Part shown: positions 309 through 36,648 of the stretch, piece by piece
How the letters are laid out: the number at the start of each line of letters is the position of its first letter
How positions within the stretch are numbered: position 1 is the stretch's first letter
Assembly (NCBI RefSeq): GCF_021869535.1
Contig: NW_026262745.1
Coordinates: 24,180,001-24,244,000 of the forward strand
Source of the DNA: Mytilus californianus
Taxonomy: Eukaryota
DNA length: 64,000 nt
Direction of reading: 5' to 3'
Program-made: the position numbers and the translations under genes
The notes under the pieces: generated by a model
Told to the model about the DNA's origin: nothing
The model's database searches: none
Seen by the model: the letters and a program-made list of their open reading frames with translations, nothing else

Positions 309-2439
309 GAGGGGTATGTATAAATATGTGTTATACTTATTGTGTTAGAATGGTGGAGTCCAGTACAAAAAAATAAAAAGAATATATACAAACATTTCAA
401 TTAAATATGCAAAGAATTTACGTTTATATCACCTTGTGTCAGTGTATTGATTATTACACCAGGAAGTGTTAATGACAGATCTACAGAATGGAAATGTCCC
501 AAAACGTACATTTGTACTTTCTTTTCAAATGAATTCTTAAACAGTATCCCCTTAGACTGTGTATATTTGTTTTAGCTATGTCTGAATACCAAATTTGTAG
601 ATTATATTTTACAACTAAGCTGCTGCTATTTGAATTTGAAGTGAAGTGACTAGACACCTTCCCCCTTTTTCGTATGACGACCAGAATGATTGCATATCAT
701 TTGCAGTAATGAACAAAACGCATATTGTGAATGATCTTTTTTCTAAACTGGATAAAGAAAAATAAAGAAACGGAAGATTTTTATTGATTTACTTTAAAAA
801 AAATATATATATCATTCATGTCATTATGATGGTATAGATATCAGATAAACAATGATTATACCCGATCATGAGGGTGGACAGGGGGTACCTATCTCCCACC
901 TCCCGACCCCTAACTCCCACCTCCAACTTTTAGAATCTTTTTTTCTGTCCCACCTATTTTTTGTCTCTTTTGTTCATTTTCGTACTGTGGATATGTACAT
1001 GTTTAACATTTTTGTTTGTTTGGTGCTATTAATAGACTTATTTAGAATAGAATATTATTTAGACTTAGTGATCATTCCCTAGGCATTGAATTGGAAAGGT
1101 ACAGAAACATTCCAAGAGCACAAAGATTATGTAAACAAATGTGCAGTCCTAGATGACGAATTTCATTTCTTTTTTGTATTGTGACATTAACATATCATTG
1201 CGTTCTATTTTTTTTTGCTTATATAAAAGACTATGTACCATTATTTCAACATCTTGATGCATTTAATAAACTAAAACACATTCTAAACCCCATCCCTGAA
1301 CTTGTTTGTCATATTGGAGTCTTTATTAAGCAGTCGTTAGAACTGAGGGGGTCAGACCCATGTCAGACAAGCTTAATTATGATTGTGTTTTTTACATAAA
1401 TTTATAATTGAACTCTTAAAATATGTTCTATTATATTGTATTGTATTACATTGTATTGCATTGTATTTAAAATGCATAATTGTTTGTTTGTATTGCTTGA
1501 CCCTTATGGGTGTAATTTTGCAATAAAGATTATTAATAGTGTGACCTTTTGTGGAGGAACTTTCGATTATCGTTTAATTGCAACAATATATACTTGGTAT
1601 GAATCACAATTTGCAGGGTATTTAGAAATTTTCATTTAAATGTCCGTCTTCTGTTCTACCGACGGTCTTCCTTTCAGAAAGTTAATATGTCTGGAAAAGA
1701 TGTTTAATTCAATGAATAGACACAGCTTATTCAGTTGACCTACTTTTACCCCCCAAAAAGTGTCGTTGACTCTTGCCTTTGTTTGATCTCAATCAAATAT
1801 AAGTACGTTTTTTTTTAACTGGGTACACCGGTACCAAAACTTTGCTTTTTTTTTATTGTGTGAGGGGTTTCAAAAATTTTTGTTGGAGTTTTGGGGATAA
1901 AATATTTCCACATGTGAATATGTATAACTTTGTTTAATGATGCTTGTTTTTCAGCAGACCTTTGGGTTAGTTTCACCAGATCAGCTGGATGTAGAGAATG
2001 AAAAGAATGAGAGCCAAAACTCTTCCCAGCTACTTCTCTGAAAGAAGTTTTCCTCTCTAAATGCACGTCTAGGTACCTGATTTTTATTTGTAAATGATTG
2101 CTGTCTTGGTAACAAATGAATAGTTAAGGGATGGTTCTATGAACTATACCACCATGTTTAAGAGTTAATGTAGCGGTTTTCAAATAGGGGACTGAGGGGC
2201 CAACCACTATGTAGGGGACAGCAATCAATAAATCAGAAAAATGTACAAAAACTCGAAGTATAGCCATAAAGGGAGGCGGTCCCAAGCCCTTTGTTAGAGC
2301 TGTAAATACGAAAGATGCAAAACAATAATTTTGTAGCTTCTTATTCATTAATTTCATTTTGTACCTATTTACAGAATGAGTTCTGAAATATAAGTTGGAT
2401 AAAAAGAAAAATCAATAAAGGAAAAGGGTATAATACAGA

Positions 2440-5400
2440 ATGAGTAAAAAGAGTAAAATCCTTGTAGCAGCAATTGACTTTGGAACAACGTTTTCAGGAT
2501 ATGCATTTTCCTTCAAAACCGATTATGAAAATGATCCAATGAAAATTTCTGTCAATCAACAATGGACAGCTGGTTCTAGAAGCTTGATATCACTGAAGGC
2601 ACCGACTGTTGTCCTGTTAGACAAATCCAAAAAATTCCTGGCATTTGGATACGATGCTGAAGACAAGTACTCGGAGTTTGCTTTAGATGAAGTTCACCAT
2701 AATTATTATTACTTTCGTAGGTTCAAGATGTTACTACACGAAACAAAGGTAAATTTATATCTATTGTCTTCATTTCGATTTTAGTTTTATTTTCATATTG
2801 AAACCTGTTTTAAGAGACCACTTAAGGGAGAGCTAACTTTACAGGGGCGGATCCAGGATTTTGGAAAGGGGGGGCGTAGTTGTAAAAATTTTTTGGACCT
2901 TTTCTGGGCTAAAAAACATAAAATAAGTGTATAATGCACATTTTTAGTGACGGTTCCTAGCGTGGGGTATGTATATATATTATGTATATTATAGTTAAAG
3001 TGTAAGCTTGGGTTGGACATTTTTGATGCCGCATTCTCCCCATTAATTGTCTATTATAAAATGATTGAATGGATCTAAAGCTATGTACTAATATATTTGA
3101 TGTGGGATTTGTCAGTAAAAAATGGACATGGAAAATTCTCGTTTGTTGTATGGTTAGTCAGCATAACCTCACAAATTACTTGTTGTAAACATGATATACG
3201 GATATTCAATGAAGTTTATAATACGACCGACACGAACAAAGACAAACAAGCAATTTTTATCCAAATGTTTGGTTGAAATGTTTCACACAACAAGGGAAGT
3301 GATGGTTCCAAATCAACCAAAGGCTAGGAAGGAGTCTGAAAATTAAATGACAACGAAGTTGTGAATGACGGTCGACAAATGGAGACATAAAGGCCACACC
3401 CAGCAGGCAGGTTGCAGTTGGGCCTTGAAAAAAGTATTCAGTATATCAGTTCGGCGAAACAGACATTCCGGTCAGTTATGGGATTTACATGCAACCCCCT
3501 CAAAAAAAAAATAACGCCCGTTTTTTATTCACCATGTTCATTTAATGCTGATTAATTCTGTTGGATTTTTCAGAATTTTTTCTCTAAAATATCTCAGACT
3601 GCCCTATCAAATCAAATGGTCCGTACCTTAGACTTTAAATATATCTAGAGCTTACTGACTGGGGATCATTATTCAGCAATGTTATTAATTGGCTGGGGCG
3701 TGTGGGGTTAAATATATTTTCGTAGGTAAATAATATTGTCGTGGAACTTTTTTTTTCATGAGAGTGTAATAGAGTATTACATTCTGTTGAGTGGAAATAT
3801 GAAATAGAAGTCAATACGTTCTTGCTCAATCCTTTGTCGCTTTGAAGGTGGCATGCTTTTCATCCTCCGCCTAAGCAATGTGTTACTGTAATTTGAATTT
3901 CAAAATGACTGAGTGACGTTTCAAACGTACTGATCAACTCCACCGTAGCGAAACACATGACTGACATAATCAATAATATATTACGGTAAATACGAGCGAA
4001 AAATATCTTTATAAGTAAAGAATTGTCGCATAAAAATTAAATACACGACCGGGAAATGGCAAAGTTCACGAAGTCTAGTCTGATTCATCATTTTACAAAA
4101 AAAAAAAAAAAGTTCAAGCAAAGGGGGGGGCGTACGCCCTCTACGCCCCCCTCTGGATCCGCCACTGCTTTATATGATTTTTATTGTACAAATTTTTACG
4201 TCATTATGTGCATTTTCTTCCACTTAAAAACCTTCCTCTTGTTAGATTGTTAGTTCAGAAAAGACTTCAGCGGTGTCACTGTGTCTTCATATTTTAATCT
4301 ATTGTAAATGTTATTCAATAATTTATAATTATTCAATTCTCGAATATGGTCGTTGTGGCATGACGTGGACAATTGACCACTGTGAAAGTATTAAAGATAT
4401 TTATTTTGGTAAACTTGTATAGATGGGTCTCAGTAAAGTTTATTCAAATTATAATTTTATTAGTCCCCTACCGACGAAGTCGAAGTGGACTTTAGGTTTG
4501 CACTCCGTCTGTCTGTCTGTCCATCCATCAGTCCGGCAAATCAGTTTTTCACACTTTTTTCTTCGTTCTTGAAGATATGGTTTTGATATTTGGTGTATTG
4601 TTATATCATGACAAGTTACAGATCAAGTTCGAATCTTGTTCCGGTCTGACGATTTTGTGCAGAGTTATGGTCCTTGAACTTAGAAAATTCACTCAAATAA
4701 TCAGTTTTCCGCACTTTTTTTGTCATGCTTGAAGATACTGATTTGGTGATTGGTATTTAGTTTTATCATGACAAGTTACAGATCAAGTTCGAATTTTGGT
4801 CCAGTCTAATGATTTTGTACAGAGTTATATGGTCCTTGGACTTAGAAAATTCACTCAAATAATCAGTTAACCTCACTTTTTTTCGTCATGCTTGAAGATT
4901 TTGTTTTGATAATTACTAGTAGTATATAGTTTTATCATGACAAGTTACAGATCGATCAAGTTCGAATTTTGTTCCAGTCTGATGATTTTGTGCAGAGTTA
5001 TGTTCCTTTGACTTAGAATCTGAAAATTCACTCAAATAATCTATTTTCCACATTTTTGTTCGTCATGCTTGAAGATATTGACTTGATATTTGTTATATAG
5101 TTTACAACATGACAAGTTATAGATCAAATTAGCATTTTGTTCCAGTACAATGAATTTTTAACCGGTAGAGGACTATGTATTGCCAGGCAATACTCACAGG
5201 ATGCTCGAGTGTTCTTGGCCTCTTGTATATTCATTCTGGAGTTTAGTTTATTCAAATTTAAAGCAGTAGAACAGTTTGGTGAATATATGATGATATATAT
5301 TCGTAAATGACATGCGTTGTTCGTTTATTTATTTATTAAGCATCTTACACGAAAGACGATGGTCAAAGATGATGATGGTAAAGAAATGCCAGCTATAGAA

Positions 5401-8400
5401 ATATTCTCCATGGTTATAAAATATCTAAAGGGTCATTTGTTAGAAACATTGGAAACAAGAGGAACTGGACTAGATAATAACGACATTCATTGGGTGTTAA
5501 CAGTACCAGCTATTTGGACAGAACCTGCTAAACAGTTTATGAGAGAAGCCGCAGAAAAGGTACCGTGAACCTGTAAACTGATGTATTTTTTACTAACTTA
5601 TTTTCAATTATCAGCGGAATCAGCATTATTTTGGGCTATATATTTTCATCAGGTTACTTCATATATATGCATATAAATAACCATTACTGTAATTGGTTTG
5701 TTTGACGGAATTGGTTACAAACAATTTGACAAAAATATAATTAAGTTACTATAACTAATAAATGAAAGTACACTTTTCAAATTTTTTAGCTGACATAGCA
5801 AAAGGTGTAAGTGTAAGCTATCATTTATGTATAAAATTAGGAGGTAAGATTGCCTATGAAAAAACTATACAACGGATTCCAAATAAAAGTGGATTTTTAG
5901 TCTGTTAATATTTCATATTTTCATCCAAACTTGACCCAACAAAGCAGGAATAAAGTATAGAAGATCATATGTGGACATTCCCTACTTTGAACTTTTTTAG
6001 CGAAAAACATTACCACAAGGAGCAAATGTTGATTATGATTGGTCATTTTCAAATTCCTTATTCTTTGAAAATACATGGCCAACTTTTAATAATTTAAACT
6101 TACGAGAACTTGGTCACCCTCGTTCTGTTTACAGATAGAATCAAATAGGTTTTCTAGGATATCATATTTTATCTTCTCTTTGTTTTTAAACTTTACTTCG
6201 TCTATTTTAATCGAACTTGACAGAAATTATGTTTGCTTTTATAAAAATAAATTCAGATCTGATAACACTTTGCTGCAAAAGACAACATTAAAAGTTTTCA
6301 AATTTCATGTTTTTTTTGGTTCATGGCCAATTCTTTTAAAACTTTATTGGTAGATGAGTATGAGATCTTTAAAAGGGACTCGGTTAGCAGATTAAAAAAA
6401 TTAATCGATGTTTTTTCAGATTTTTCAGTAAACTGCACATTGCTAGAAAACAAAGAAATATTGATGCCATCATTAAATACGTTAATATAAAAGTAATAGA
6501 AATAGACAGTAAAAAATTAAAAAACCTTGATTAATTTTTATGCCCCCGCCGTAGTTTTGTTACCCTTGTCCGTCTGTATGTACGTTCGTACGTCCCAAAA
6601 TTGGTTTCCGTTCTCTAACTTTAGTTTGCCTCAACCAAATGTTATGAAACTTATACACAGTGCGTATTACCACAAAACACAGATCAAGTTTGAATTTTGG
6701 TGGCGTCACTTTAACCGTTCTAGAGTTATGCCCCTTTATAAATGGAAAAATTGCAAAATTTTTAGTTTCCGTTCTCTAACTTAAGTTTGCCTCAACCAAA
6801 TGATATGAAACTTGTACACAATGCTTATTACCACAAAACTCAGATCAAGTTTGAATTTTGGTGGCGTCACTTTAACCATTCTAGAGTTATGTCCCTTTAT
6901 AAATTGAAAAATTGCAAAAAAAAATATTTTCTTTTAAATATCAAGTAATTTTTAAAATTGGAGTTATCTTCCTTTGTAGTTGAATCAACTACAATCAATG
7001 CTTTATACAATGCATTGTTTAATTTTTACTTCCACTGATAAAACACAGATCAAGTTGAATTTGGGTAGTGTCACTTTAACCATTTTTGAGTTATGCCCCT
7101 TTATGAATCGAAGGATTGCAAAATTTTTAGTTTCTATTCTGTAACTTAAGTTTGCCCCAACCAAACATTATGAAACCTATACACAATATTCATTACCACA
7201 AAAATAAGATCAAGTACAAATTTTTTGTTTCCGTTTTCTAACTTTAGTTTGCTACAACCAAAAGTTATGAAACTTATACACAATGCTTATTACTACATAA
7301 TACAGATTAAGTACGAAATTTGATGGCGACACTTTTACCATTCTTGAGTTATGTCCCTTTATAAACATAATTTTTCGTTTCCGTTCTCTAACTTTAGTTT
7401 GTCTCAACCAAATGTTATAAAACTTATACACAACCCTTCTAGAGTTATGCGTGTTTACAAATAGAAAATTGCTGAATTTTTAGTTTCTGTTCTCTACTTA
7501 AGTTAGCCTCAACCAAATGTTATGAGACTTACACACAATGCTTATTACCACAAAACTCAGATCAAGTTCAAATTTGGGTAGCGTCACTTTTACCGTTCTT
7601 CAATTATGTCCCTTTATAACTATATGATATGCAAGCGGAGGCATCACCTGTGTCCATATGTGGACAGTGAGTCACACTATCCACATTTATTTTTTAATCT
7701 GCTAACCGAGTCCCGGTGGTCAATGGTGGTACATATGTTCAAGGGTCCTTGACACCACACGTAAGTACCTGAAAGTTTCCGAATATGACCTTGCTTTCGC
7801 CAGGAAATTTGATTTTTTTTCTTGATTGAAACGATAGCTGAATAAGGTTGTCATGGATCGACAAACATATGCATGGATTCGATAGAATATTCGTTTGAGA
7901 AGAGATTGAGTGACTTTGTAAGGTATATGGCCAGATAGAAATAATTATAATATTTTTTCATTTAAAGAAGGTTGTGCAATTCAAAATGGCGACTTGGATC
8001 CCTTTAGGATTTTTCAGTATACGGATGTGGATAGTAAACTGCACATTGCTAGAAAACAAAGAAACATTGATGCCATCGTTAAATACGTTAATAAAGTAAT
8101 AGAAATAGACAGGAAAAAATTAAAAAAACATTGATTAATTTTTTTGTAATCTGCTAACCGAGTTCCTGTGCTTCGTTACCAATTTTTCTCCACAAAAATG
8201 TGTTGGTTATCTCCTAAATATGCAGCTAGACGTTTCTCGGACTTTAAGCACCCTTTATTCCACAAATCAAATAAATGAAGTCATTTAACAAAAAAAAATT
8301 ACCTTACAAGCTCCCTAGCTCAAGCCGTGTGGTCATTTGTGATATCACCGATGGCTAATAACGAATTGCCATAAAGACCCCTCATATTTTACCCCATGTA

Positions 8401-11400
8401 AGTTTTATTCACATTGGCCGAGTTTCAAGTACTTGTATTATTTTAAAGAGCTTGTTATCAGCTATTACGTCTAACACAAAACAACCTTTATTATTGTAAT
8501 TTATTTAAATAGGCTGGTATTAGTGGTGAACAACTTAGTATTTGTTTGGAACCAGAGGCAGCATCCTTATACTGTCAACATTTACCAATAGAAAAACTAA
8601 AGGATAAAGATGGTATAGGCAGTGAATTTACGGCATCCGGAAAAGGGTCCAAATACATGGTTATAGACTTGGGAGGTAGGTTAGATTAAAGTAAAACAGA
8701 CAGAATTTGCTCAATTAGACTTGCTTACGATCAGAACCAACATTTTTGAACCAATAGATACATACAAAACAGACATGGGAACAATTTATCCCTAAAGTAC
8801 ATACTTAAAAAGATAATAATTCAGTATGGCTCATTGAAAGTATTTCTACTAAAGTCTTATCAACATAGGCTTTTTAACCGGATTTTCGAAGGAAATATCG
8901 GTTATTGATTTGGGGATGTACAGCGGGCGAGCGGGCGGGCGGACGGGCGGCTGCCAAACAGTGTCTCTTCAATTACATAAAAACGCTGTGATGATTTTTT
9001 TTCAAATTTAGATATGTTGTTTCTTGTGATTAAATGAAGGTCTAGTTCAATTTTCACGATTTTAGTATTTCTCCTTTTTGAGTTATCGCCATTTTTAATA
9101 TCCAAAAGTGGTATTTTTAAATATTTTTCTCTTGTTATCATATTATGACTAAGTTTATGGTAAATGTCTTATCTCACAATAAAGATTGGAGTGACAGATC
9201 TATTTGAAAATTTTCTATTTCCTAAGTGGTGATGATTATAAGCTATATTATTAGACATTTTGAAGATTATTACATTATTAATTATTATATATGTACAGTT
9301 AGAGTACTATGTTAAACCATAGTTCTGTTCAAAGGGAAATAACCCTTCAGATTTGCAAGTATAATTTTCATTATTAATTAGATCTGGGAAATATCTTAGC
9401 ATATGATAATCATTGGAGTGACAGATTTATTTGAAAATTTTCTGTTTCTGTAGGACTGTATATATAAAGTTTGAAATTTACTAGTAGGACTGTATAAATG
9501 AAGTTTGAAATTTACTGTTCATTATTAGACATTTTGTAGATAATTAAGTCTCCCTAAACCATATATATTCTTACCCCCAACCACCTTCAATTTGTGAATG
9601 TGCTTTTATCTTGTAAACGGTCGAGATCCCAACCCCTATACCATATATATTCTTGTATGGGACAATAAAACAAATCAAATGAAATATTGGGGGAGTCCCA
9701 GGGTTCATCCCCACACCCTTCTTTTTAAAAACTTGTAAACAGCCAAGATCCCCACCCCGAAACCATATATATTCTTGTATGGGACAATAAAACAAATCAA
9801 ATGTAATAAAAGGCTAGTCCCCTGGGGTCACCCCCACCCACTCCTGTTTGATAACTTGTAAACGGTAAAGATCCCCACCCTGAAACCATATATATTCTTG
9901 TATGGGACAATAAAACAAATCAAATGAAATATAGGGGAAGTCCATGTGGGTAACCCCCAACCCCCTTCTTTTTGATAACTTGTAAATGGTCAAGATCCCA
10001 ACCCCGAAACCATATATATTCTTGTATGGGACAATAAAACAAATCAAACGAAATATAGGGGAAGTCCAGGGGGTCACCTCCACCCCCTTCTTTTTGAAAA
10101 CTTGTAAACAGTCAAGATCCCCACCCCGAAACCATATATATTCTTGTATGGGACAATAAAACAAATCAAATGTAATAAAAGGCGAGTCCCCTGGGGTCAC
10201 CCCCACCCCCTCCTGTTTGAGAACTTGTAAATGGTTGAGATCCCCACCCCTAAACCATATATATTCTTGTATGGGACAATAAAACAAATCAAATGGAATA
10301 TAGGGGAAGTCCCCTGGTGTAACCCCCAACACCCTTTTTTTGAAAACTTGTAAACGTCAAGATCCCCACCCCAAACCATTTATATTCTTGTATGGGACAA
10401 TAAAACAAATCAAATGAAATAAAAGGCGAGTCCCCTGGGGTTACCCCCACCCCCTCCTGTTTAAGAACTTGTAAACAGTCGAGATCCCCACCCCTAAACC
10501 ATATATATTCTTGTATGCAACAATAAAGGGGAGAGTCTCCTGGGGGAACCCCCCCCCACCCCTTTTTTTGAGAACTTGTAAACGGTCGAGATATCCACCC
10601 CTAAACCATATATATTCCTGTTCTTCGTCATTTCAAGAAGATTTGAATGACATACAGGGTCAATCCATAGGCGTCGATTATGCATATCACAAACCAATTT
10701 GTACTGGACTTTGCCCGATGTCAGGTGACCATGGGAATGACGAATTATTGGAGCTTTGTTTGGGAGACTTCGTAACAGCATCCTGTTACAATTATTTCTT
10801 GATTTCTTGTTACTGATAAGTTTTATAGATTTTGAAAAGACATTATATTAATTAGTTAATGATAAATAAAATTTTGGATTTTTTTCTTCTTTTCTTTGGT
10901 AAATTGTTTGAAGAATTTTGTGGCAAGTTTGTTTGTTATTCTGTAAAAACTAATTTTCTGAATGCTATATATTTTTTTTTTTGATGAAGTAAACTCCTTT
11001 AAAAACTAAGCTTATATTGTCTATTAATAAACATATATTTAGATTTCTGATTTTGGGCCCAGTTTTCAAGTTGGTCCAAATCGGGGTCCAAAATTAGACT
11101 GTGTTTGATTTCTACATAAATTGAATATATATATAGGCTTCTTTGAAATGCTTAATCTAAACCTGTATTTCCTTTCATTATTAATAAGATAATACCATAT
11201 TGAGGTCCAAAAGGTCCTAAATTAAACTTTTGATTAATTTCATCAAAAATTCTTTGGTTCTTTGATATGCTGATTCTAACAATGTTTGAGTGTTAAATCA
11301 TATCTAATTTTAGAGAACTTAGTCATCACTGGTTGTTGTTATTATATTATTGATTATAATTTGAAAAATTGCATCATATCTTATTTTAGAGAACTATTTA

Positions 11401-13578
11401 TCCAGTTTGAGTTATTTCCCTTTGCACAGAAAATATTATGGATAAAATTAACCTGTGTTTCATTTCAATATAAATTAAATACATGTATATATAGGGTTCT
11501 TTCAAATGCTGAATCTAAACCTGTATTTGAATATTAGATTTTTGGGCCCAGTTTTCAAGTTGGTCCAAATCAGGGTCCAAAATTAAACTTTGTTTGATTC
11601 AACAAAAATTGTATTTATGGGGTTCTTTGAAATGCTGAATATAACCATGTATTTAGAGATTTTGGATTGTAGGCCCCTTTATCAAATTGGTCCACATTGA
11701 GGTCCAAAGGGTCCTAAATTAAACTTTTGTCTGATTTCATCAAAAATTGAATTATTGGGGTTCTTTGATATGCTGATTCTAATATGTACTTAGATTTTAG
11801 ATATTGGACCATAATAGGTAAATATATGTCCATACTTGCTCAACTGTTCAGGGTTCGACCTCTGCAGGAAAATCCGGTTTGCAGTCACTCTGACAGCCTC
11901 TTGTTATATAATAAATCGTGATCTTTGTCGAAACACCGGCATCTAGGCTGATGCGAATCTCAGGCTAAATGTTCCGACGAAGTATTGTACCTACAAAAAT
12001 TCTAAAGACTGTGTATATCATTTACTGCTATATAATCAGATCTACTTGATTATAATTTAAAGCTCCATCTAGAACAGATTCAATATAAAAGCTATATCAT
12101 GCTCTTTACTCTCCTTTCAATGCTTATGTTGTACTGTAACACCAATGTCCCAGGTTAAGGGGAGGGTTTGGCGCCAGCAAACATGTTTAACTCCGCCACA
12201 TTCTGTATGTGCCTGTCCCAAGTCAGGAGCCTATGATTCAGTGGTTGTCGTTTGCTGCTGTATATCATATTTGTTTTTCGTTTATTGTTTTGTACATAAA
12301 TCAGGCCGTTAGTTTTCTCGTTTGAATTGTTTTACATTTGTCATTTCGGGCCCTTTTATAGCTTACTATGCGGTATGGGGTTTGCTCATTAATGAAGGCC
12401 GTACGGTGACCTATAGTTGTTATCTTCTACGTCATTTGGTCTCTGGTGGAGAGTTGTCTCATTGGCAATCATACCACATCTCTTTATTTTTATATATATT
12501 AAACTGATATTTAAAAAAATATATTTCAGGTGGAACAGCTGATATAACATGCCATCAGAAAGACGCCGAGGGTAGCCTTCGAGAACTACAGAAACCAAGT
12601 GGGGGTTCATGGGGTGGTACGCGTGTAGATGAAGCTTTCAATCAGCTTCTTATTAAAATTGTTGGTGCACATCATTTTAGAACTTTTCAAGAGAAAAATA
12701 AAGCTGATGCATTAGATATCTTAAGAGAAATGGAAACAAAGAAGAGGAACATTAAAAACGACACCGAAGGAAAGGTCACGTTAAAAGTTCCCGTTTCACT
12801 AATTCAGTCATTTGAAAAAGAAACGGGAGAGGAAATCAAAGACGTAATAAAACAGATGGCATATGCAGGCAAAATGACATGGGTTGGAGATAAGTTAAGA
12901 ATGGAGGCAAATCTTTTCCGAGCATTGTTTAATGAACCGAAGACTCAATTGGTAAACCACGTGAAGTCTTTATTGGCTAAAAGCTCATTAAAAGATGCAG
13001 GCACGCTATTAATGGTCGGGGGTTTTTCCGAGTCTCCCATAATGCAGTCGGCAATTAAAGATGCGTTTCCAGACAAGAAAGTCGTCGTTCCAGATGAAGC
13101 TGGTTTAGCCGTTTTGAAAGGTGCCGTTATGTATGGGCACCAACCTCAAACAATTTCCGTCAGAATATCGAGATATACGTATGGAATTAACATTTCTCCG
13201 CCATTTAAATCCGGTGAACATTCCCCAGAAAGACGTGTTAGCATTGAAGGTACAGACAGAGTTAAAGACGTTTTCAAGAAGTACATAGAAGCCGACCAAA
13301 CACTGAAAGTTGGCGAAGCTGTCAGTGGCCGTCACGTCACAATAAAGAAACGCCAAAAAGAAATGCTTTTAAAAATCTTTGCGACTGAAGACAGTAATCC
13401 TCGTTATGTCACAGATAAAGGTTGCGAGTATTTGGGAAAGGTTGTCATCCAACTGCCGGAAGTCGACGAAAAGCTGAAAGTTGATGTGAAAATGATTTTT
13501 GGAGAAACTGAACTTATGGTTGAAGCAAAGGAATCGACCACTGGTTCTACGTACAAATCATTCTTTGACTTTTTATAG
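2440..13578 (+). CDS. HSPA12: HSPA12-family atypical Hsp70 (heat shock 70 kDa protein 12A/B-like), intact, 579 aa, 4 coding exons
   Basis: join(2440-2748, 5341-5559, 8513-8675, 12530-13578) = 1740 nt, all GT-AG introns, phases 0/0/1, no internal stop. Motifs: VAAIDFGTTFSGYAFS (phosphate 1), WVLTVPAIW, LEPEAA, YMVIDLGG|GTADI (phosphate 2, split by intron 3), GSWGG, LLMVGGFSESP, LAVLKGAV. No EEVD tail. The DFGTT+SGYAFS, VPAIW and EPEAA signature with introns is typical of HSPA12, not canonical HSP70. Confidence 0.95.
2842..4167. mobile_element. Non-autonomous DNA transposon (MITE-like, 1.3 kb) in HSPA12 intron 1
   Basis: TIRs CAGGGGCGGATCCAG (2842-) and CTGGATCCGCCACTG (-4167), with G-rich subterminal GGGGGGGCGTA motifs. 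Identical 5-bp flanks CTTTA at 2837-2841 and 4168-4172 (TSD). Confidence 0.75.
4455..5213 (+). mobile_element. Helentron-associated non-autonomous element (HINE/pearl-like)
   Basis: Starts in a T-run. 5' subTIR TAGTCCCCTACCG, (GTCT)n microsatellite, four 160-172 bp core repeats (ACAAGTTA anchors at 4611, 4771, 4940, 5112), 3' subTIR ACCGGTAGAGGACTA (5161-5175) and hairpin GTATTGCCAGGCAATAC. Confidence 0.8.
6375..7714. mobile_element. Short TIR element interrupted by a HINE
   Basis: Left TIR GGGACTCGGTTAGCAGATTAAAAAAATTAATC (6375-6406). The right TIR is split by a HINE (GATTAATTTTT at ~6529-6539 and TTTTTAATCTGCTAACCGAGTCCC at 7691-7714). A second, uninterrupted partial copy lies at ~8033-8166. 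Confidence 0.65.
6536..7692 (+). mobile_element. HINE/pearl-like element in HSPA12 intron 2
   Basis: 5' ATGCCCCCGC and 3' GCGGAGGCAT subTIRs, GTCC/GTAC microsatellite, several degenerate ~150-bp core repeats (TTCTCTAACTTTAGTTTGCCTCAACCAAATGTTATGAAACTT), 3' TGTGTCCATATGTGGACA hairpin, inserted in a T-run. Confidence 0.8.
8871..11905 (+). mobile_element. Composite HINE-like element in HSPA12 intron 3
   Basis: 5' subTIR AACCGGATTTTC (8876-) with (GCGG)n microsatellite; matching 3' GAAAATCCGGTT (~11868-11879) plus hairpin GCAGTCACTCTGACAGC. Contains a nested element (9543-10814) and core repeats of another family (10830-11860). Confidence 0.7.
9543..10814 (+). mobile_element. Nested HINE carrying a ~122-bp tandem array
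   Basis: 5' AAGTCTCCC (9546-9554) and 3' GGGAGACTT inverted pair, hairpin GTAACAGCATCCTGTTAC, and about 9 units of ~122 bp (ACCATATATATTCTTGTATGGGACAATAAAACAAATCAAA). The 3' end is shared with the element at 51637-53246. Confidence 0.7.
12124..12487 (+). repeat. Dispersed high-copy repeat family (Penelope-associated/SINE-like)
   Basis: AACATGTTTAACCCCGCC...CTGTCCCAAGTCAGGAGCC...GGAGAGTTGTCTCATTGGC...ATACCACATC. Related copies at ~20570-20682, 22330-22440, 28570-28670, 30772-31060, 32668-32856, 44020-44290, 53281-53760 and 58460-58700. Confidence 0.7.
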
Positions 13579-16510: not shown

Positions 16511-17027
16511 GTATTTAAAATCATTTGGAATACATAGCCTGCGTATCAAACCTTTGAAATTTGACGTTCCCTGCTTCAGAATTGCATGTTGATGGATTTA
16601 ATATTTGTTGAATATCTAAACAATTAATATTTTCGTATGATAAAAGAACATGTCTATTTTTTGTTTAAAATGACAATGTTGTGTACATATTGAAATTTAC
16701 ACATGCGTTAAATACAACTTGTACGTTTTAGTCGATTAAATGTATGTGTGAAACATTGGTTGCAGCATACCAAAGGTCCAGATTACAATCAGAACAAGGT
16801 ACACTCTATAGACACAGTTATGTCGAATGTCTTTTGTTGATTTGTAGTTTAATATTAACAATACAAGAATTATTACAATAACATTCAATAATATTTATAT
16901 AATTTGACATTTTATCTTGATTTGATGGTAGTGTTCCGTCATGGTTTGCTTCTCGTGAGTTATTGAACTGGATGTTTTTTTTAGATAATTGTTATCTTCG
17001 CCAAACACGGTGGAATTATTTGTGGTA

Positions 17028-20000
17028 ATGGCACTTCGACATCAGGTTTGTAATTCAACTTAAAATCATATGTGGAAAGGGGATACTTTATGAAACTTTG
17101 AAACTTTAAGACAGTATGCGGAAATGAAAAAAAACGATTGCATCAAAATGGTTACCGTTACAAAGTTCTGATTATTAGATGAGAACAGTAACATCTAGGA
17201 TTATTCTGTCCTGCTCCAATAAGTTTTACCATATTAATAAAGAGTTGTCAAGAGCACGATAATACATTAATAAAGCAAAATTGTATTTTTTTGTCTTTAT
17301 TGTCGTAAACTTTGACACATTTATTTTTGAACTTCTTGATTCCAGAAAAGTTCCAGTAGTGCATCTTCAAAATCAAGGCGGACGGCAATCATTAGACTCT
17401 TGAGACAAGTCAAAGATGCATATACTATTGAAAAGATCAAACAGGCTAAAGGAGAGTATGAAGGACTACTGGCAGCGGATCAGAGATTTCAAATATACCC
17501 AGGGAAAGTAAGTTGTTGTATTCATATTATAGAATTAAACGTTCAGATTTCTGCATTTATTAACTATAACTGTCGGATGGAATTTTGAAGACATTGGTTA
17601 TGATATGTTTAAACTATAATTACTCCTTCCTTAATTATGTTGTTTATACAATTAGCGATTTCTTATTATCTTTATGCAGCATAAGCAGGCGACGGATCTT
17701 GAACATCTTATTGATTACGTAGAACGTTCATTATTGTTTTATTAATAAATAAAATGAAATGTTGGTTGTACAACAATACTTCCAGAAATCAGCATAGGTC
17801 TTCAACAATGGACATGTGTCACCACTTTTTATTTAATTTCATAACAGCATTTAGTACTTGATGTTTATTTGTCTTTTAGGAATTCTTAGCTGTAGAGAAG
17901 CAGGGTGTGGACAGAATTGAAGCATTAGCTCCCTTGCAAAAACATGCCAATGTTCTATATGAAATGTTAACCACCGATAGAAACGGTGTTCCTGTACAGA
18001 AAGAAGCACAAGATGAGCTATGTCGACTCCTGGTTGTAAAGGAAGCATTTGATCTTATTTCAGCAAAGCAGGTTATAAATTTTATTTCTTAATTATTTTT
18101 TTTTAACTTTGAAGTTTCATGTACGAAGATCATCCTTTATTACGACGTTTTTCTTAATTTAAGCTCGGATTCCTTTTATCTCCTGTACATGTAATATGGT
18201 TATGAGGTGATATTTTTGTGTGATTTTTTTTACCTGGTTAATGTTTATGACGTATGTTGTTTTTTTTTTTTTTTTTATTTTACTATTTCTTCTTCGACTG
18301 ATTGAAATATTTATCTTCGACTGATTGAAATATTTATAGTCGATAATTACACATAAACTGTGTCCTTACAAAAGTTATTATTATACGTTCATTGTTTAAA
18401 TTCAGCAGCTAACTGCATTATAAACATGTTATAGTTAGATGAAAAGAAACGGTCTCGGTTGTGTGAGTTACCAGATACTGTGACTATACCATTAGAAGAT
18501 TATGAAGACATGAGAAGAAAAATGAGACTCCAGAAGCTAGAACTCGATGAATTAAATTCTAGGTAATATTTGCTTATTTTATTCATTACGAATACAAGTT
18601 GTCTTATTGGTAATCATATCACATCGTTAAATTTTGAAATGTTTCGCAAAAGAATATTCAGCGAATGGCATAAAATATAAAAGAATCTTCAATTCATTAA
18701 GATATTCATTCGTATTAAATTTGGCTTAAAGAGAATATATCTGTAGCATGAATTGAAGCACATCATTTTATAGTTTTCCAAGGTCAATAATTCGCGCTCA
18801 TTCGAGTCTACCCAGACAATTGTGAAGAAATTTATAAAACTCTTTTATATTTACATATGTAGGTCAAGTAGAAGACAACACCACGGACATTACATAGAAC
18901 TTGGTACTGGTAATCCCATACGACCTACAAGAATAGGAGATATTTATGATGGTTTGTTTGACATACAATGGCATGAAGCACTTCCAATAGCGATGGGACT
19001 GTATCCAGAAGAATCAGAAGCATTTATATTTCTTAGAGATATGCTTTTGGTATGGTTTATATATATATTAAAAACCTGCAATTTCAGATACATTTTGGTT
19101 ATTTGTAAAATATTGTATTTTACATTTACATCAAAGCTAAGATAAAACCATACGACAGTACAAATAAAATAGAATAAAACAAGTTGAACCGCGAAATGCT
19201 CAATAATGCTATCCCCCTAATATATAAGTATTATGTTAACAGGAAATTGATGAGTGATAAACATGAACATGCATCACATAATATAGCATGCTCAACTGAA
19301 GCTTGATACTAAGTTTCTGGAAGCTCTGATTTGTAATTCATGAGAAAAATGCGACATAAGTTTGAAAGAACAAACGGAAGAAAAAAGTCCACATAACACG
19401 GAACTGAAAAAACAAAGATTTAGTATTTCTAACCACATAAAAAAACGGAAGAGAACGTAGATCCTGCACCACTAAAGGCACCATTCGTCTGGATCGAATA
19501 AAAATCAAGTGTTTTAAAACTTCATTAAACGGAGTACACTAACAAACTTGGGAAGGTAGATAACATCACTTATCTGAAAGGAAATAAGAAAACCTCTGAA
19601 ACTGGAAGCTGTTAAGATTTCCATTATCATGAAAAAGCATACCAATAGTCTTTCAAATACAAAGAAATTGCCTATTTTGATAAACAGAAGATGCAAGAAC
19701 CTCTCAAATATACATTTTATGACACAAGCTATAACATTGGTAAAATGACCCGGTCTTCATGCTTTAAATTTTCATATAAAAAAATGGAGTTAAATAAAAA
19801 CATTTTTTTTAAAGATTATTTTTATTAAAACATATACACTAATATGTCTCATATATTTTAATGTAGAAAGGAAGCTACCTACTGTGTTTTCATTTTAGAA
19901 AGCCTACGACTTTAGTTCAGACATTGCTAGAGACGAACAGGAGAAATTAGTTAGCCATCTTAATAAATCTGTTTTAGAACCTACTTTACACATGGAAGGA

Positions 20001-21088
20001 CAAGTAAGGTTAATCTACACATGACATGATGTTAAATCAGTAGTTTCATTTTGCTTGTATTTGATGTTTGTATATTGCAAACATTTAAGGCTCAAAACAA
20101 AATATCAAGTATATCTCACTCCTCCGTAAATAAGAATTCAAAACTTAAATAACTGTGAGTGTGTTATGTATTTTATTTTCTCAAGAACTGGTACATGCAA
20201 TTGAAAGTATAATATCTCCATTTATATTTGTAGGAATATCGTAAAAGGGCCAAAGATGATGCTGAAGTCACTGAGCAGAACGAAATGTATGCTAAAGAAG
20301 TAAGAAAAGCGACGGCTATGAAATCTTTACCGTCTCTCTTTTCTGTAAGTATGTTTTTTGAAAATTCCTTTTCAGCATTCTAAACCACCTGAATCTGTCA
20401 CATTTACCTTTAAAATATAAATTAGTACTTAACGCAAATATGTTTGTACTGTATATACGGAAGAAGCAGTTACATGCACATATTAAATTTTAACATTGGA
20501 GATATATACACACGCTTTTGCGATTTTATACACATGGTTCTTACGAAAATCGAGAAATTAAATTCGTTCTTATATGGACCAAACAGGCCGTACTTTGACC
20601 TATTATTGTTAACTTTTTATACATTGTGACTTGGATGGAGAGTTGTCTCATTGGCACTCATACCACATCTTCTTATTTATACATACAGGTACACATATTG
20701 GTTTTTTTATGTCCGACTCTCGTTCAGTTTTATTTTTGTCGCAGAGTATTATACTTTACTTTTGTCATTTCACTTTTTGTTTTTATTTCAGCTTTTTAAA
20801 AAGCTCTACCTCCAGGAAAACCTGAACTGGTCCGAATTTCAGCTTGTCGATAGACTAAATAACTATTTGGATAAATGTGTTGAGATAACATGGTTAATGA
20901 GTGTTCATGATCCACCTCTGAGATTTGTATTAGCCAGACGTGATGAGCAAATCGACATGAGTAAATTTATGTATTTTCGGGTAAAAGGCAAGGTGACAGA
21001 ATATACAATTTGGCCGGCACTAGTTTTATATCATGGTGGTCCAGTGATACGGCATGGCCATGTCGTTCCAAAACGGCCTTCCAAATGA
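17028..21088 (+). CDS. MIEAP-domain (mitochondria-eating protein/SPATA18-like) protein A, 399 aa, 8 coding exons
   Basis: join(17028-17045, 17346-17507, 17880-18071, 18435-18562, 18863-19049, 19899-20003, 20234-20344, 20792-21088) = 1200 nt, GT-AG, open frame. Coiled coil ending ELNS-R, then RPTRIGDIYDGLFDIQWHEA, and C-terminal YLDKCVEITWLMSVHDPP...[18 protein letters not shown] matching the SPATA18 C-terminal pattern (recalled: FIQEICCIAFAMQALEPP...VWPALMENDCVIMKG). The start exon is short (MALRHQ) and less certain. Confidence 0.85.
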
Positions 21089-30600: not shown

Positions 30601-33466
30601 GTTAGCTTATTGTCGTATAAACGTTTATGACTTGTAGGATCTGAAAATATATATAAAAAATACATTTACTAACACTGTTCATGATGCTCTAGCTTTATAC
30701 ACCAAAAGAAAAGTCTATAATTATTCTTAAGTCATTACTTCGGTACGGACTTGCATGAATAAAGGACGCCCGCAAACATATTTAACCCCGCCACATTCTG
30801 TATGTGCCTGTCCCAAGTCATGAGCCTGTAATTCAGTGGTTGTATATCATATTTGTTTTTCGTTCATTGTTTTGTACATAAATCAGGCCGTTAGTTTTCT
30901 CGTTTGAATTGTTTTACATTTGTCATTTCGGGGCCTTTTATAGGTGACTATGCGGTATGGGTTTTGCTCAATGTTCAAGGCCGTACGGTGACCTATACTA
31001 AATAGTTGTTAACTTCTATGTCATTTGGTCTCTGGTGGAGAGTTGGCAAGCATACCACATCTTCTTTTTAAATTTCCCCGTTTTTTTAAACGTAGTTTTA
31101 AACTTCCTACGGTAAAATTGACCCTAGATCAATTTAGCTATTATTTAGGTCCTTTTTTACGTATTTTACATCCCTGATTTCAAATATTTAAGTTTGAGCG
31201 TTTCGGATGAAGTTTATTCCAGAAAAGCGCTTCTGACGCACGGAATATATAAAAATATTACAGAATATAGAGCGGCTTTGAAATGTATTCTGTTTGTAGA
31301 AAGTATAGTGTGTGTACTTTTCCGGAATCATTGTTGTTAATTGAATGAGTAATCTTAAAGAAGGTTAAAATACATATAAAAATGTCATATAACCTGATTA
31401 TGCAAAAAATTAAATTGAGCCCTCGTTACTATAAAAATTTAAAAAAATAAATGAATGCAATGATAAGATGTAGAATTAAATGCACTCAAACAAGAAAACA
31501 CATAATTATTCAACCCACATTTCCTAATAATACAAATTACAGTTCTTGTAAATCAGTTTTAAAAAGTGTAAAATTATCATTCTGTAAATTGTCAAATTAA
31601 ATTGAATTAAAATGAAATAGCAAATGTATTAATTACACGTATTGTGAAGTATAGGTACCATCAAATGTGATACAAGTATATAATATACCGACTATCGTTA
31701 TACTAAATTAGTACATATTTTATGCTCATGATTTTATAATAGCTATCCCTATTTCTACAGTATGGCTACACTTGGTGTAAAAAGCTGGCCGCAGAGCAGT
31801 TAGATGAACTTTCTGAGGCCATGTCACAACCTGTAGCAGATCCTGGTGTAAAACCTGCTTCTCGATTGGTAAGATGGTAAAAAGATTTACTTGAGACAGT
31901 TGTTTGAACTACTTGATGTTTTTACCACCACTCCCTTGTATTTCAGCGGTTTAACTTTTAAAAAGAAAAATTTAATGTATCTGCAAAATAGAGGTATCAT
32001 TATGAAGTATTTAGTGTTTAAATGGTTGATCATTATAATATTTTGTTTTCTATATCTTGATTGAGACATGAGGCGCCATTGGTTTTATTATAAAAAGTAG
32101 AAAAGACAACTAATAATATATGTATTTACTGTACAAACTTAAAGAATGTATGATCTTTCAAATATATGTGGGTCTGACGCAATAGTCAGTTAGGCTACAA
32201 AAAACATTAGTTTTCAATTGGTTTAATTTCAGTTTTTAGTGACTCCTTCTGGTTCAAAATGAAATCTATTAATCTTCTCTGTCGTAAATGATCAGTAAAG
32301 GAAATGTTTGATTTGATTAAAAAACAACAGATTTATGTATAAAAATAAACTGATAAAGTGGTTATGCAAGAATGCAAAAAGTCGTTATATCATTAGAACT
32401 TTCATGCATTGAACTTATTTTGAAAGTGCAAGAAATGTGTACATTGTTATGATATTGCAGAGTAACACAGTAGCAAAAACACCACGAACAGGGAGACTGT
32501 CGTCCAATCTAGTTTTACAACAAGCCAGAGATTTTAGGAAGCAGATGGCTACCTCATCAGTTGATGCTGTGGTAGATGTATGTTAAATAACTAATAACAA
32601 TTTGAATCTTGATGAAAACTTATTGTTTGTAAAACTGTTGACTTGTTTACAACATTTCAAATATAAATAAGAAGATGTGGTATGAGTGCCAATGAGACAA
32701 CTCTCCATCCAAGTCACAATGTATAAAAATTTAACAATTATAGGTCAAAGTACGGCCTTCAACACGGAGCCTTGGCTCACACCGAACAGCAAGCTATAAA
32801 GGGCCCCAAAATGACTAGTGTAAAACAATTCAAACAGGAAAACCAACGGTCTAATTATTTTACTACGTGAGTGTTCTGTTATATGGATATATCTCGAAAA
32901 TTAAAAATAATTTGGGCAAAGAAGACTTTTCCTCTCAGAAATTATGGAAACTCGACCGTAACATATCCTGAACTTTTTTTAAACTAATTAATGGAACCTA
33001 ACGCTGAACGAGGAAAATTGTTACCTGTTTTTGTTGCTTTTATTGTAATTCTTTCCTTTTTCTTTACTATCAAACCAATAACTTATATCTCGCACTTGTT
33101 AATTGTATTATTATATCAATAATTACACTAACTTTTTTTAAACAGATACGTTAAAGTAGATTTATTTTATTGCAGCGGTTTAAAGTTGAAGTGATAAAGG
33201 ACGAGCTTGGTATGGATACCCAGCGATTGTCACCTTCAGTCATTAAGTTTATCCACAAAGCAGCCGAGTTATTGTGGTACATGTGTATTCTTGATCCTCC
33301 AATGTACATTGCCTGGCCTGAATATAACGAAACATTTGATACAACAAAATATATATTTTATAAACAGAAAGATAAAGGACGGAAAGTTAAGGTACCCGTC
33401 TGGCCAGCTCTTTACCTGCAAGAAAAGGGACAGCTTATAACAAAAGGTTTTGCAAAAGGATACTAA
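27689..33466 (+). CDS. MIEAP-domain (mitochondria-eating protein/SPATA18-like) protein B, 446 aa, 7 coding exons
   Basis: join(27689-27880, 28691-28888, 29861-30099, 30378-30573, 31761-31868, 32461-32577, 33176-33466) = 1341 nt, GT-AG, open frame. Coiled coil YEKLERKLGKQEEVIARKGAEINELRS-R, then SPTKIADKFKNLYEVEWYAA, and C-terminal FIHKAAELLWYMCILDPP...NETFD...VWPALYLQEKGQLITKG. Confidence 0.9.
31195..31240 (+). ncRNA. Degenerate hammerhead-ribozyme-like motif at the end of a dispersed repeat
   Basis: GAGCGTTT CGGATGA AGTTTATTCCA GAAA AGCGCT TC TGACGC: HHR layout with palindromic AAGCGCTT helix III and GCGT/ACGC helix I, but core CUGAUGA reads CGGAUGA and helix II is poor. Confidence 0.4.
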
Positions 33467-35965: not shown

Positions 35966-36648
35966 AATAATACTCTGGTAATCTAGCTTTCAATGTGCAA
36001 GAATTGTCCGAAGAATTAGTACCCGGTATTATACTACCAACTCAAACAATATTTGAAAAACGATTGGCCAATAGGTTGCTGATACCCATTTCGGCACAAT
36101 CAAGTACCATCAACATTACAAGCAATTATATAATGTTTGATTGCTCTTAAGACTAAATACAACGGTCGTATAATCTTATTGTTTTCACATAAAAGGACTG
36201 AGTAAAACAGTCTACAGCTTATATTCTAGAATAAATAATAATTATCTAATTTTATATTAAAGGGGCATTTGCTAAGATTTAGACAAACATTTTAAACGAG
36301 ATTTTGTGTTTTTGTTTCAAACATTTGTAAAAGTGGAATTTTGAAATAATTTTTCGCTATAGGCAGTCAATTTGGTTCAATTTTGTCAAAATAGGTTTAA
36401 AAATATCGCTTATGTATCATCAAATTTGGCTTGCAAGTTAATAATTCATCCTTATTTGAATCCGTATTCATGCGATCTTCAATTTATTCCTTAGCAAGAG
36501 ATGGGTAACGCATGATTGTGCTAAGCAATTTCAGTTATGAAATTAAGAACACTGTCAACATTGAAAAGTGAAACAAGGGAGCCCCTGGAAAGAACCATTT
36601 CGTTGACTGATAAGACCAACAAGAAAATTCATTCTTATACAGGTTAAA

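What the first reader, a model, noticed from the sequence alone, without database searches (positions are those of the whole stretch)
20909..21088. MIEAP C-terminal domain of gene A resembles the GrpE beta head
Seen: [53 protein letters not shown]. Recalled E. coli GrpE C-terminus: [55 protein letters not shown]. Manual alignment: DEQID/[45 protein letters not shown]. Inference: remote homology, which would give MIEAP-family proteins a mechanistic link to Hsp70s.
Basis: inference. Interest (0 to 1): 0.7.

Follow-up and report, generated by a model that had tools for sequence, protein, structure and literature searches.

The report
GrpE-like head in mussel MIEAP protein
The end of a mussel "mitochondria-eating protein" family gene is predicted to fold like the head of GrpE, the partner that resets Hsp70 chaperones. 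This hints at an untested chaperone link for a poorly understood protein family.

Summary
The quoted peptide is real. Window 20909-21088 is the end of the last exon of an expressed, spliced 8-exon gene ("gene A", 399 aa) with a full Pfam MIEAP domain. It is one of at least 99 MIEAP hits in this Mytilus-like genome.

**Sequence evidence is weak.** BLASTP and shuffle tests give nothing. No GrpE hit appears in Pfam or PDB profile searches. hhalign gives P = 0.005-0.02 (probability 2-7%), centred on MIEAP G-x-x-F-D-x3-Y against GrpE G-x-x-F-D-P-x2-H.

**Structure evidence is specific.**
- AlphaFold models (pLDDT 94 and 89) show helices followed by a six-stranded beta head.
- Foldseek's top 10-11 PDB hits are all GrpE.
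- All seven GrpE entries lead the re-alignment.

So the fold resemblance is supported. Homology is plausible but unproven, and GrpE's invariant residues are not kept.

The Hsp70 link remains an inference. It is consistent with an HSPA12-type Hsp70 gene 3.4 kb upstream. MIEAP sequence also lies within 10 kb of the HSPA12 counterpart in six of eight other bivalve genomes checked.

The closest full-length look-alike is the plant COST1/GIL1_IRKI_C domain.

The scan has also noted MIEAP clusters and the HSPA12 linkage on this genome.

The parts
17028..17045 (+). Gene A, coding part of exon 1 (ATG at 17028). Transcript contigs extend the exon upstream to about 16750.
   Evidence: Spliced contigs of runs X1-X3 join 17045 to 17346. 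First in-frame ATG found. The 399-aa transcript-derived protein P0271 has the same start and length.
17346..17507 (+). Gene A exon 2 (N-terminal helical, hydrophilic region)
   Evidence: GT..AG joints 17045|17346 and 17507|17880 in three runs.
17880..18071 (+). Gene A exon 3
   Evidence: Joints 17507|17880 and 18071|18435.
18435..18562 (+). Gene A exon 4 (charged, coiled-coil-like stretch; ends in phase 2)
   Evidence: Joints 18071|18435 and 18562|18863. Reading frame closes.
18863..19049 (+). Gene A exon 5: start of the MIEAP domain (first helices)
   Evidence: BLASTP/tblastn matches to the N-terminal part of MIEAP domains. Joints. Pfam MIEAP covers P0271 residues 187-393.
19899..20003 (+). 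Gene A exon 6 (variable middle helices of the MIEAP domain)
   Evidence: Joints 19049|19899 and 20003|20234. The latter is also seen in 3 raw RNA reads of X21.
20234..20344 (+). Gene A exon 7 (middle helices of the MIEAP domain)
   Evidence: Joints 20003|20234 and 20344|20792.
20792..21088 (+). Gene A last exon (98 codons plus TGA): three helices followed by the beta head
   Evidence: Pfam MIEAP 38.6 bits. AlphaFold model m5c7db5a0d862, pLDDT 89: H2-10, H13-21, H23-38, E44-46, E59-61, E68-74, E76-78, E85-87, E89-93.
20858..20905 (+). Last helix (exon residues 23-38), the counterpart of GrpE's final bundle helix (E. coli about 118-137)
20909..21085 (+). The stretch of the finding: six-stranded beta head (strands within 20921-21070) plus a short basic tail
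   Evidence: pLDDT 93-97 over this part. GrpE chains rank at the top in Foldseek and VIA-align.
20942..20977 (+). Loop between strands 1 and 2 ([12 protein letters not shown]). The family consensus G-x-x-F-D-x3-Y-K-x-Y aligns with GrpE G-x-x-F-D-P-x2-H-Q-A.
   Evidence: This is the hhalign local core. It is the best of 51 offsets at profile level. Translation checked.
20987..21070 (+). Strands 3-6, carrying the MIEAP invariants G66, W74, P75, G83 and G89
   Evidence: Invariant columns of alignment A1, 71 sequences. Translation checked.
2434..13575 (+). Context: HSPA12-type atypical Hsp70 gene. First coding exon from 2434, last exon 12508-13575, stop 3.4 kb before gene A's ATG.
   Evidence: ORFs listed. 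The last exon is 94% identical to Mytilus 'heat shock 70 kDa protein 12A/B-like'. Pfam HSP70 hits the full-length counterpart P0272.
33155..33463 (+). Context: last exon of a second MIEAP gene ('gene B'; earlier exons about 28691-30627)
   Evidence: Pfam MIEAP 48.7 bits, profile positions 120-192. Own-genome scan.

Best explanation
The stretch encodes the C-terminal beta 'head' of the MIEAP domain of an expressed mussel gene (gene A, 399 aa). The protein has an N-terminal helical region followed by a MIEAP domain built as a helical bundle plus a six-stranded beta head. The last helices plus the head adopt the same arrangement as the C-terminal half of GrpE (bundle helices plus beta head), and GrpE is the closest solved structure. 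The protein is a member of the MIEAP family, not of the GrpE family. The likeness is at fold level, with one weakly shared loop motif, so it reflects either very remote common ancestry or convergence. Shown: the gene model, its expression, MIEAP membership, the predicted fold, and its specific likeness to GrpE. Inferred: by analogy with GrpE, the head is a docking surface for the nucleotide-binding domain of an Hsp70-type ATPase. The most likely partners are the HSPA12-type Hsp70s encoded next to MIEAP genes in bivalves. My odds: about 0.75 that the GrpE-like fold is real, about 0.4 that it reflects common ancestry, and about 0.2 that it binds or regulates an Hsp70.
For: Gene and family: the exon joints appear in three transcript assemblies. 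The spliced ORF is 399 aa, and P0271 is an independent 399-aa product with 5 substitutions. Pfam MIEAP scores 38.6 and 41.8 bits.

Sequence: hhalign gives P 0.0048-0.02. An empirical null from permuted GrpE columns gives p about 0.007.

Context: an HSPA12 gene lies upstream. MIEAP sequence lies within 10 kb of the HSPA12 counterpart in 6 of 8 other bivalve genomes. Both families are among the strongest bivalve gene expansions (PMC8382680). HSPA12 has no known function or cofactor (PMC13580251).
Against: No sequence-based search reaches significance at database scale. hhalign probability is 2-7%. My own profile alignment against a permuted-column null gives p about 0.2-0.3. No GrpE hit appears in Pfam for 89 MIEAP domains, in PDB profile searches, or when PF01025 is run over the whole genome.

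GrpE residues that are invariant in my 31-sequence alignment (A156, G177, R183, R186, V190, plus Y178 at 0.92) are not matched in MIEAP.

Both structures on the query side are predictions, and I could not inspect coordinates or a residue-level superposition.

Published work on human Mieap assigns the structured C-terminal half to cardiolipin/phospholipid interaction and mentions no chaperone (PMC10845071).

The conserved adjacency could be inherited microsynteny without functional meaning.

Confidence: 0.6

Rival explanations
1. The GrpE likeness is convergent or merely architectural: a small beta sheet packed on a helical hairpin. The MIEAP C-terminal domain would then work as published for human Mieap, as a hydrophobic structured region that binds cardiolipin-type phospholipids and partitions the protein into mitochondrial condensates, with no Hsp70 involvement.
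Against: Every GrpE representative ranks above all other PDB folds with two aligners. A nominally significant shared loop motif sits at the equivalent place. HSPA12 adjacency recurs across bivalves. The lipid-binding role in the paper is itself a hypothesis from deletion constructs, not a structural result.
Confidence: 0.25
2. The MIEAP domain is the animal counterpart of the plant COST1 / GIL1_IRKI_C (DUF641-protein) C-terminal domain. Like COST1, it would act as a coiled-coil dimer whose C-terminal domain sits next to, and tunes, a different nucleotide-binding partner such as a dynamin-like GTPase of the atlastin/RHD3 type, with links to autophagy. GrpE would be only a more distant look-alike of the same module.
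For: In the Atlas shape search, PF24994 GIL1_IRKI_C clusters match the whole domain (TM 0.65, 182 of 214 residues, rmsd 3.6). They match the last-exon model at TM 0.70, better than GrpE at 0.37 and 0.54. Language-model features also put PF24994 nearest, at a weak score of 0.79. COST1 is a dimer whose C-terminal domain is modelled beside the RHD3 GTPase domain and stimulates GTP hydrolysis, and its authors ask for animal counterparts (PMC13189119). Both COST1 and Mieap are tied to autophagy-type quality control.
Against: No Pfam PF24994 hit appears among the top families for 89 MIEAP domains. The feature score is below the tool's trust level. No genomic or experimental link between MIEAP and a dynamin-like GTPase was seen here. 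This reading does not exclude the GrpE-like one.
Confidence: 0.1
3. There is nothing here beyond chance. The manual alignment is a coincidence, and the structural hits are artefacts of low-complexity secondary-structure strings in predicted models.
For: Pairwise statistics are null. Foldseek E-values of 0.014-0.8 miss the 0.001 line.
Against: Two different aligners, two different models (a paralogue's full domain and gene A's own exon) and a third library (Atlas) all single out GrpE. Alignments cover 72-94 residues including the head. There is a clear gap to the next unrelated fold.
Confidence: 0.05

Closest known systems
GrpE, nucleotide exchange factor of DnaK / mitochondrial Hsp70 (Pfam PF01025; structures 1DKG, 3A6M, 4ANI, 8GB3, 9BLS)
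   Different: There is no detectable Pfam or PDB-profile similarity. GrpE invariants (R183, R186, G177-Y178, A156, V190) are not kept. MIEAP has its own invariants (G66, W74-P75, G83, G89). MIEAP carries extra N-terminal helices that appear to complete a bundle within one chain, whereas GrpE builds its four-helix bundle from two subunits; that point is inferred and was not inspected. Dimerisation, Hsp70 binding and exchange activity are untested. The mussel keeps a separate canonical GrpE gene.
Mieap / SPATA18 family (Pfam PF16026, mitochondria-eating protein)
   Same: Gene A is a bona fide member. The full domain matches profile positions 1-194 of 195, all family invariants are present, and the protein has an N-terminal helical region plus a C-terminal MIEAP domain. 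It belongs to the large bivalve expansion described in PMC8382680.
   Different: Gene A is a short, highly diverged paralogue, about 20-39% identical to other members. Its copy of the GrpE-like loop motif is degenerate (D and I in place of G and F). No function is known for any bivalve member. Nothing in the Mieap literature held here mentions GrpE or Hsp70.
Plant COST1 / GIL1 / IRK-interacting protein C-terminal domain (Pfam PF24994 GIL1_IRKI_C, in DUF641 proteins)
   Same: This is the best full-length structural look-alike of the MIEAP domain in the ESM Atlas (TM 0.65-0.70). It shares the coiled-coil plus C-terminal domain layout. COST1 is dimeric, membrane-associated and autophagy-linked, and it acts on a nucleotide-binding partner.
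   Different: No sequence-level match was found. It is regarded in the literature as plant-specific. Its partner is a GTPase (RHD3), not an Hsp70.

Membership tests
MIEAP (PF16026) | Pfam HMM score above the gathering cut-off (27 bits) over the domain | tested here: met
   The last exon scores 38.6 bits, profile positions 122-194. The full-length allele P0271 scores 41.8 bits, profile positions 1-194 of 195, residues 187-393.
MIEAP (PF16026) | Family-invariant residues of the C-terminal part (G, W-P, G, G) | tested here: met
   G66, W74, P75, G83 and G89 are invariant in 71 sequences and present in gene A.
GrpE (PF01025) | Sequence-profile match to the GrpE family | tested here: not met
   No PF01025 hit at E <= 10 for the last exon. 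GrpE is not among the 25 families most often matched by the 89 MIEAP domains. PF01025 run over the whole genome finds only one canonical GrpE on contig C99. MIEAP profiles against PDB sequences find no GrpE at E <= 10.
GrpE (PF01025) | Profile-profile similarity (HH-suite) | tested here: inconclusive
   hhalign P = 0.0048-0.023, probability 2-7%, with a 12-14 column core at the G-x-x-F-D loop. The empirical permuted-column null gives p about 0.007. My own profile alignment null gives p about 0.2-0.3.
GrpE (PF01025) | Fold: bundle helices followed by a six-stranded beta head | tested here: met
GrpE (PF01025) | Conserved GrpE residues of the head (E. coli A156, G177, Y178, R183, R186, V190) | tested here: not met
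These are 92-100% conserved in my 31-sequence GrpE alignment.
GrpE (PF01025) | Homodimer through long N-terminal helices and a shared four-helix bundle | not tested
   Only monomer models were made, and no coordinates were available for inspection.
GrpE (PF01025) | Binds the Hsp70 nucleotide-binding domain and accelerates ADP release | not testable with these tools
   This needs binding and nucleotide-release assays. The one complex prediction gave no verdict (see Tried and rejected).
GIL1_IRKI_C (PF24994) | Sequence-profile match | tested here: not met
   PF24994 is not among the families hit by the 89 MIEAP domains at E <= 10.
GIL1_IRKI_C (PF24994) | Same overall fold | tested here: inconclusive
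   Atlas shape search gives TM 0.65 (182 residues, rmsd 3.6) and 0.70 (92 of 98 residues). Both sides are predicted models, and no alignment was inspected.

The most novel reading that the evidence does not exclude
MIEAP-domain proteins, and with them the plant COST1/GIL1_IRKI_C proteins, are a eukaryotic offshoot or analogue of the GrpE module: coiled-coil proteins whose beta head docks on a nucleotide-binding domain. In bivalves they would be dedicated cofactors (exchange factors or adaptors) of the orphan HSPA12-type Hsp70s. That would explain why the two families expanded together and why a MIEAP-HSPA12 gene neighbourhood has persisted across bivalve orders. Human Mieap/SPATA18 would then act in mitochondrial quality control at least partly through an Hsp70-family ATPase.
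Probability: 0.17. Interest if true: 0.9.

Novelty: new variant of a known kind. Interest (0 to 1): 0.68.

Why it matters
Mieap/SPATA18 is a p53-induced mitochondrial quality-control factor whose structured C-terminal domain has no assigned fold or biochemical activity. HSPA12-type Hsp70s have no known function or cofactor, yet they are among the largest gene expansions in bivalves, as are MIEAP genes. A GrpE-like head in the MIEAP domain gives a concrete hypothesis that can be tested at the bench: does the domain bind an Hsp70-family nucleotide-binding domain and change nucleotide release? That hypothesis would connect the two orphan families. It also points to a fold-level link with the plant COST1 family, whose authors explicitly asked for animal counterparts. 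If the likeness is only convergent, the result still gives the MIEAP domain its first structural description.

Tried and rejected
1. **Complex prediction.** I ran the HSPA12 counterpart P0272 (580 aa) with gene A's MIEAP domain (P0271:165-399). The result was no verdict (score 0.01, mark 0.34, alignments not used). It is not evidence either way.

2. **First attempts at a diverse GrpE profile.** The search for homologous proteins with E. coli GrpE and the search for related loci in genome contigs returned only relatives at 86% identity or more. I then built the profile from 30 Pseudomonadota genomes. It covers only that phylum.

3. **Dynein-light-chain-like reading.** A PDB profile hit to a tegumental DLC domain (5x2d, E 0.18) was not reproduced by any structure search, so I rejected it.

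4. **Helix-only hits.** The full-domain profile matched designed helical bundles at E 0.035 and above. I treat these as compositional.

5. **My own profile-profile alignment.** With averaged BLOSUM scores or log-odds scores and a permuted-column null, it was not significant. I report it as evidence against a strong sequence signal.

6. **Fixed-register test.** This is partly circular, because the register was chosen by eye on two member sequences, so I use it only for the per-block offset ranks.

7. **Neighbouring MIEAP exons.** I tried the exons just outside the window (L122, L123) as single-exon full domains. They hold only the last helix and head plus long disordered tails.

8. **Hsp70-MIEAP fusions.** I found no HSPA12-like sequence in the 150 MIEAP representatives.

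9. **Neighbourhoods of the closest MIEAP relatives.** P0179, P0244 and P0203 lie on contigs that are too short or are not on record.

10. **Upstream exons of gene A alone against Pfam.** No hits.

Full report
**What is at the coordinates.** The window is AT-rich animal DNA (GC about 0.3-0.4) from contig C165 of a 1.65-Gb assembly. The neighbouring Hsp70-like gene is 94% identical to Mytilus galloprovincialis and M. trossulus proteins, so the organism is a Mytilus-like mussel. Positions 20909-21088 are the end of an exon that starts at 20792 behind a ...tttcag acceptor. The exon translates to 98 residues and stops at TGA 21086-21088.

**Gene model and expression.** I derived a GT-AG model from the sequence. 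It has eight coding segments: 17028-17045, 17346-17507, 17880-18071, 18435-18562, 18863-19049, 19899-20003, 20234-20344 and 20792-21088. Transcript contigs from three runs of one study carry every one of these joints, and raw RNA reads of a fourth run show the 20003|20234 joint. The spliced ORF is 399 aa. A 399-aa protein from public transcript assemblies (P0271) differs from it at only five residues. This independently confirms the start, the stop and all the junctions.

**Family.** The last exon scores 38.6 bits on Pfam MIEAP (PF16026), and P0271 scores 41.8 bits over profile positions 1-194 of 195. The genome holds at least 99 MIEAP matches, mostly on this contig, including a second gene in the window with its last exon at 33155-33463. 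A library-wide phmmer search with a complete paralogous domain (L002) found 1253 cluster representatives. Gene A is a diverged member, 33-39% identical to the best of them in the last exon.

**Sequence tests of the GrpE idea.**
- The recalled GrpE C-terminus is correct.
- Pairwise comparison shows no signal. BLASTP gives nothing in that region. Local and global scores fall inside the shuffle distributions, z from -1.2 to +1.3.
- Profiles of 71 C-terminal pieces (A1) and 89 full domains (A2) find no GrpE among PDB sequences at E <= 10.
- GrpE is not among the 25 families most often matched by the 89 domains. PF01025 run over the whole genome detects only the mussel's single canonical GrpE.
- Against a 31-sequence GrpE alignment (26-46% identical to E. 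coli apart from one near-identical Escherichia sequence), hhalign gives P = 0.02 for the full profiles. For the head-only slices it gives P = 0.0048, at probability 2-7%.
- Permuting GrpE columns 150 times gives an empirical p of about 0.007 for both comparisons.
- The local core is the loop after the first strand.
- My cruder profile alignment with a permuted-column null is not significant, p about 0.2-0.3.
Blocks 3 and 4 rank fourth and fifth.

Overall, sequence evidence alone would not carry the claim.

**Structure.**
- AlphaFold2 with alignment A2 gives a very confident model of a complete MIEAP domain (pLDDT 94.3, pTM 0.91). It has eight helices followed by six strands.
- Gene A's own last exon with A1 gives pLDDT 89 overall and 93-97 over the head, with the same strand pattern.
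- In Foldseek against the PDB, the ten best hits for the full domain and the eleven best for the last exon are all GrpE chains from T. thermophilus, E. coli, G. kaustophilus and human GrpEL1. The best is E 0.014, probability 0.98-0.99, TM 0.48. None passes E 0.001.
- In the ESM Atlas, GrpE clusters reach TM 0.54 (77 residues) and 0.51 (residues 27-95) on the last-exon model.

It contradicts the low-confidence hhalign tail, which paired W-P-A-L with R-P-A-M.

**Wider relatives.** The best full-length look-alikes of the MIEAP domain are plant GIL1_IRKI_C (PF24994, in DUF641 proteins such as COST1) at TM 0.65-0.70. Unnamed ciliate and fungal clusters also match. Language-model features point weakly to the same plant family. 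COST1 is a coiled-coil dimer whose C-terminal domain is modelled beside the GTPase domain of RHD3 and stimulates its activity. Its authors call for animal counterparts (PMC13189119).

**Genomic context bearing on the Hsp70 inference.**
- An HSPA12-type Hsp70 gene (2434-13575) ends 3.4 kb before gene A.
- Another MIEAP gene lies on the opposite strand about 14 kb upstream of that HSPA12 gene.
- The genome has at least 114 HSPA12-like last exons.
- On this contig, HSPA12 copies lie near MIEAP copies more often than circular shifts predict. Within 10 kb the count is 3 against 0.5 expected (p 0.046). Within 50 kb it is 9 against 1.6 expected (p 0.014).
- I looked at the closest HSPA12 counterparts in eight other bivalve genomes. 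MIEAP sequence lies within 10 kb in six of them: M. galloprovincialis, Mya arenaria (both flanks), Dreissena polymorpha, Tegillarca granosa, Mizuhopecten yessoensis and, as a fragment, Potamilus streckersoni. It is upstream on the opposite strand in five of the six; the Potamilus fragment lies downstream.
- It is not seen in Mercenaria or Saccostrea.
- This is far more than random placement predicts. It may reflect one ancestral arrangement that was simply retained.

**Literature.** PMC8382680 lists HSP70 and Mieap orthogroups among the strongest bivalve expansions. PMC13580251 states that HSPA12 function is unknown. PMC10845071 treats the Mieap C-terminal half as a hydrophobic, cardiolipin-interacting region. 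No paper in the searchable library connects Mieap with the GrpE fold. This does not rule out a structure-classification database already grouping them.

**Reading.**
- Shown: an expressed MIEAP-family gene, a confidently predicted helical-bundle plus beta-head domain, and a specific fold-level likeness of its C-terminal half to GrpE.
- Plausible but unproven: common ancestry, supported by one shared loop motif with p about 0.007 in a single planned comparison. GrpE's invariant residues are not kept.
- Inferred only: the head docks on an Hsp70-type nucleotide-binding domain, with HSPA12 as the candidate partner.

The protein is therefore filed as a MIEAP member with a GrpE-like module, not as a GrpE.

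Noticed in passing
window 2434-13575 (+): There is a multi-exon HSPA12-type atypical Hsp70 gene here, with its first coding exon from 2434 and its last exon at 12508-13575. It is 94% identical to Mytilus HSPA12A/B-like proteins. The genome holds at least 114 such last exons.
   Followed up: partly
L124, L126, L127, L129, L131 (and fragment in L128); own genome C165:24167684-24168685 (-): In five other bivalves (Mytilus galloprovincialis, Mya, Dreissena, Tegillarca, Mizuhopecten) a MIEAP gene sits upstream of the HSPA12 counterpart on the opposite strand, within 10 kb. This genome shows the same divergent layout, with its MIEAP last exon about 14 kb upstream of the HSPA12 start. In Mya and in this genome, MIEAP genes lie on both flanks. 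This looks like an old, retained gene neighbourhood.
   Followed up: partly
models mabd66192d35c and m5c7db5a0d862 (L002:1501-2142; window 20792-21085): The closest full-length structural look-alike of the MIEAP domain is the plant GIL1_IRKI_C domain (PF24994; COST1/DUF641 proteins), at TM 0.65-0.70. Unnamed ciliate and fungal clusters also match. MIEAP proteins may be the animal counterparts that the COST1 authors asked for.
   Followed up: partly
window 28691-33463 (+): This is a second MIEAP gene ('gene B'). Candidate exons lie at 28691-29017 and 30346-30627, and the last exon is at 33155-33463 (Pfam MIEAP 48.7 bits). It is part of a tandem cluster that continues beyond the window (hits at C165:24.26-24.45 Mb).
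   Followed up: partly
window 20523-20721 (gene A's last intron); similar peptide at 12417-12504: This is a very high-copy repeat. Summed contig depth reaches about 58,000, and hundreds of raw RNA reads run on into unlike sequence. A related copy lies just before the HSPA12 last exon. It is probably a SINE- or MITE-like element.
   Followed up: no
window 15946-16542: This is another high-copy repeat (summed depth 1000-3000, with many back-joints) a few hundred bases upstream of gene A's first exon.
   Followed up: no
window 9598-10813 (+ and -): Open frames here repeat the same roughly 40-residue peptide on both strands, inside an HSPA12 intron. This suggests a tandem array of units of about 120 bp.
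   Followed up: no
window 43145-43657 (+), 57422-58477 (-), 35144-35982 (-): These open frames look like mobile-element remnants. One carries an R-Y-I-D-D reverse-transcriptase-like motif.
   Followed up: no
L122:712-1638 (-), L123:685-1686 (-): Two MIEAP last exons just before the window encode the last helix and head followed by 200-240 residues of low-complexity, probably disordered tail. Gene A, by contrast, ends 6 residues after the head.
   Followed up: no
G000:C99:103623425-103623853 (L133): This is the mussel's single canonical GrpE gene (PF01025, 143 bits). It shows that the MIEAP expansion does not replace the ordinary mitochondrial exchange factor.
   Followed up: no
L002:61-2145 (+) and C24:31.04-31.10 Mb: These are intronless MIEAP paralogues with long coiled-coil N-termini (694 aa in L002). 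They contrast with the 8-exon gene A and may be retrocopies.
   Followed up: no
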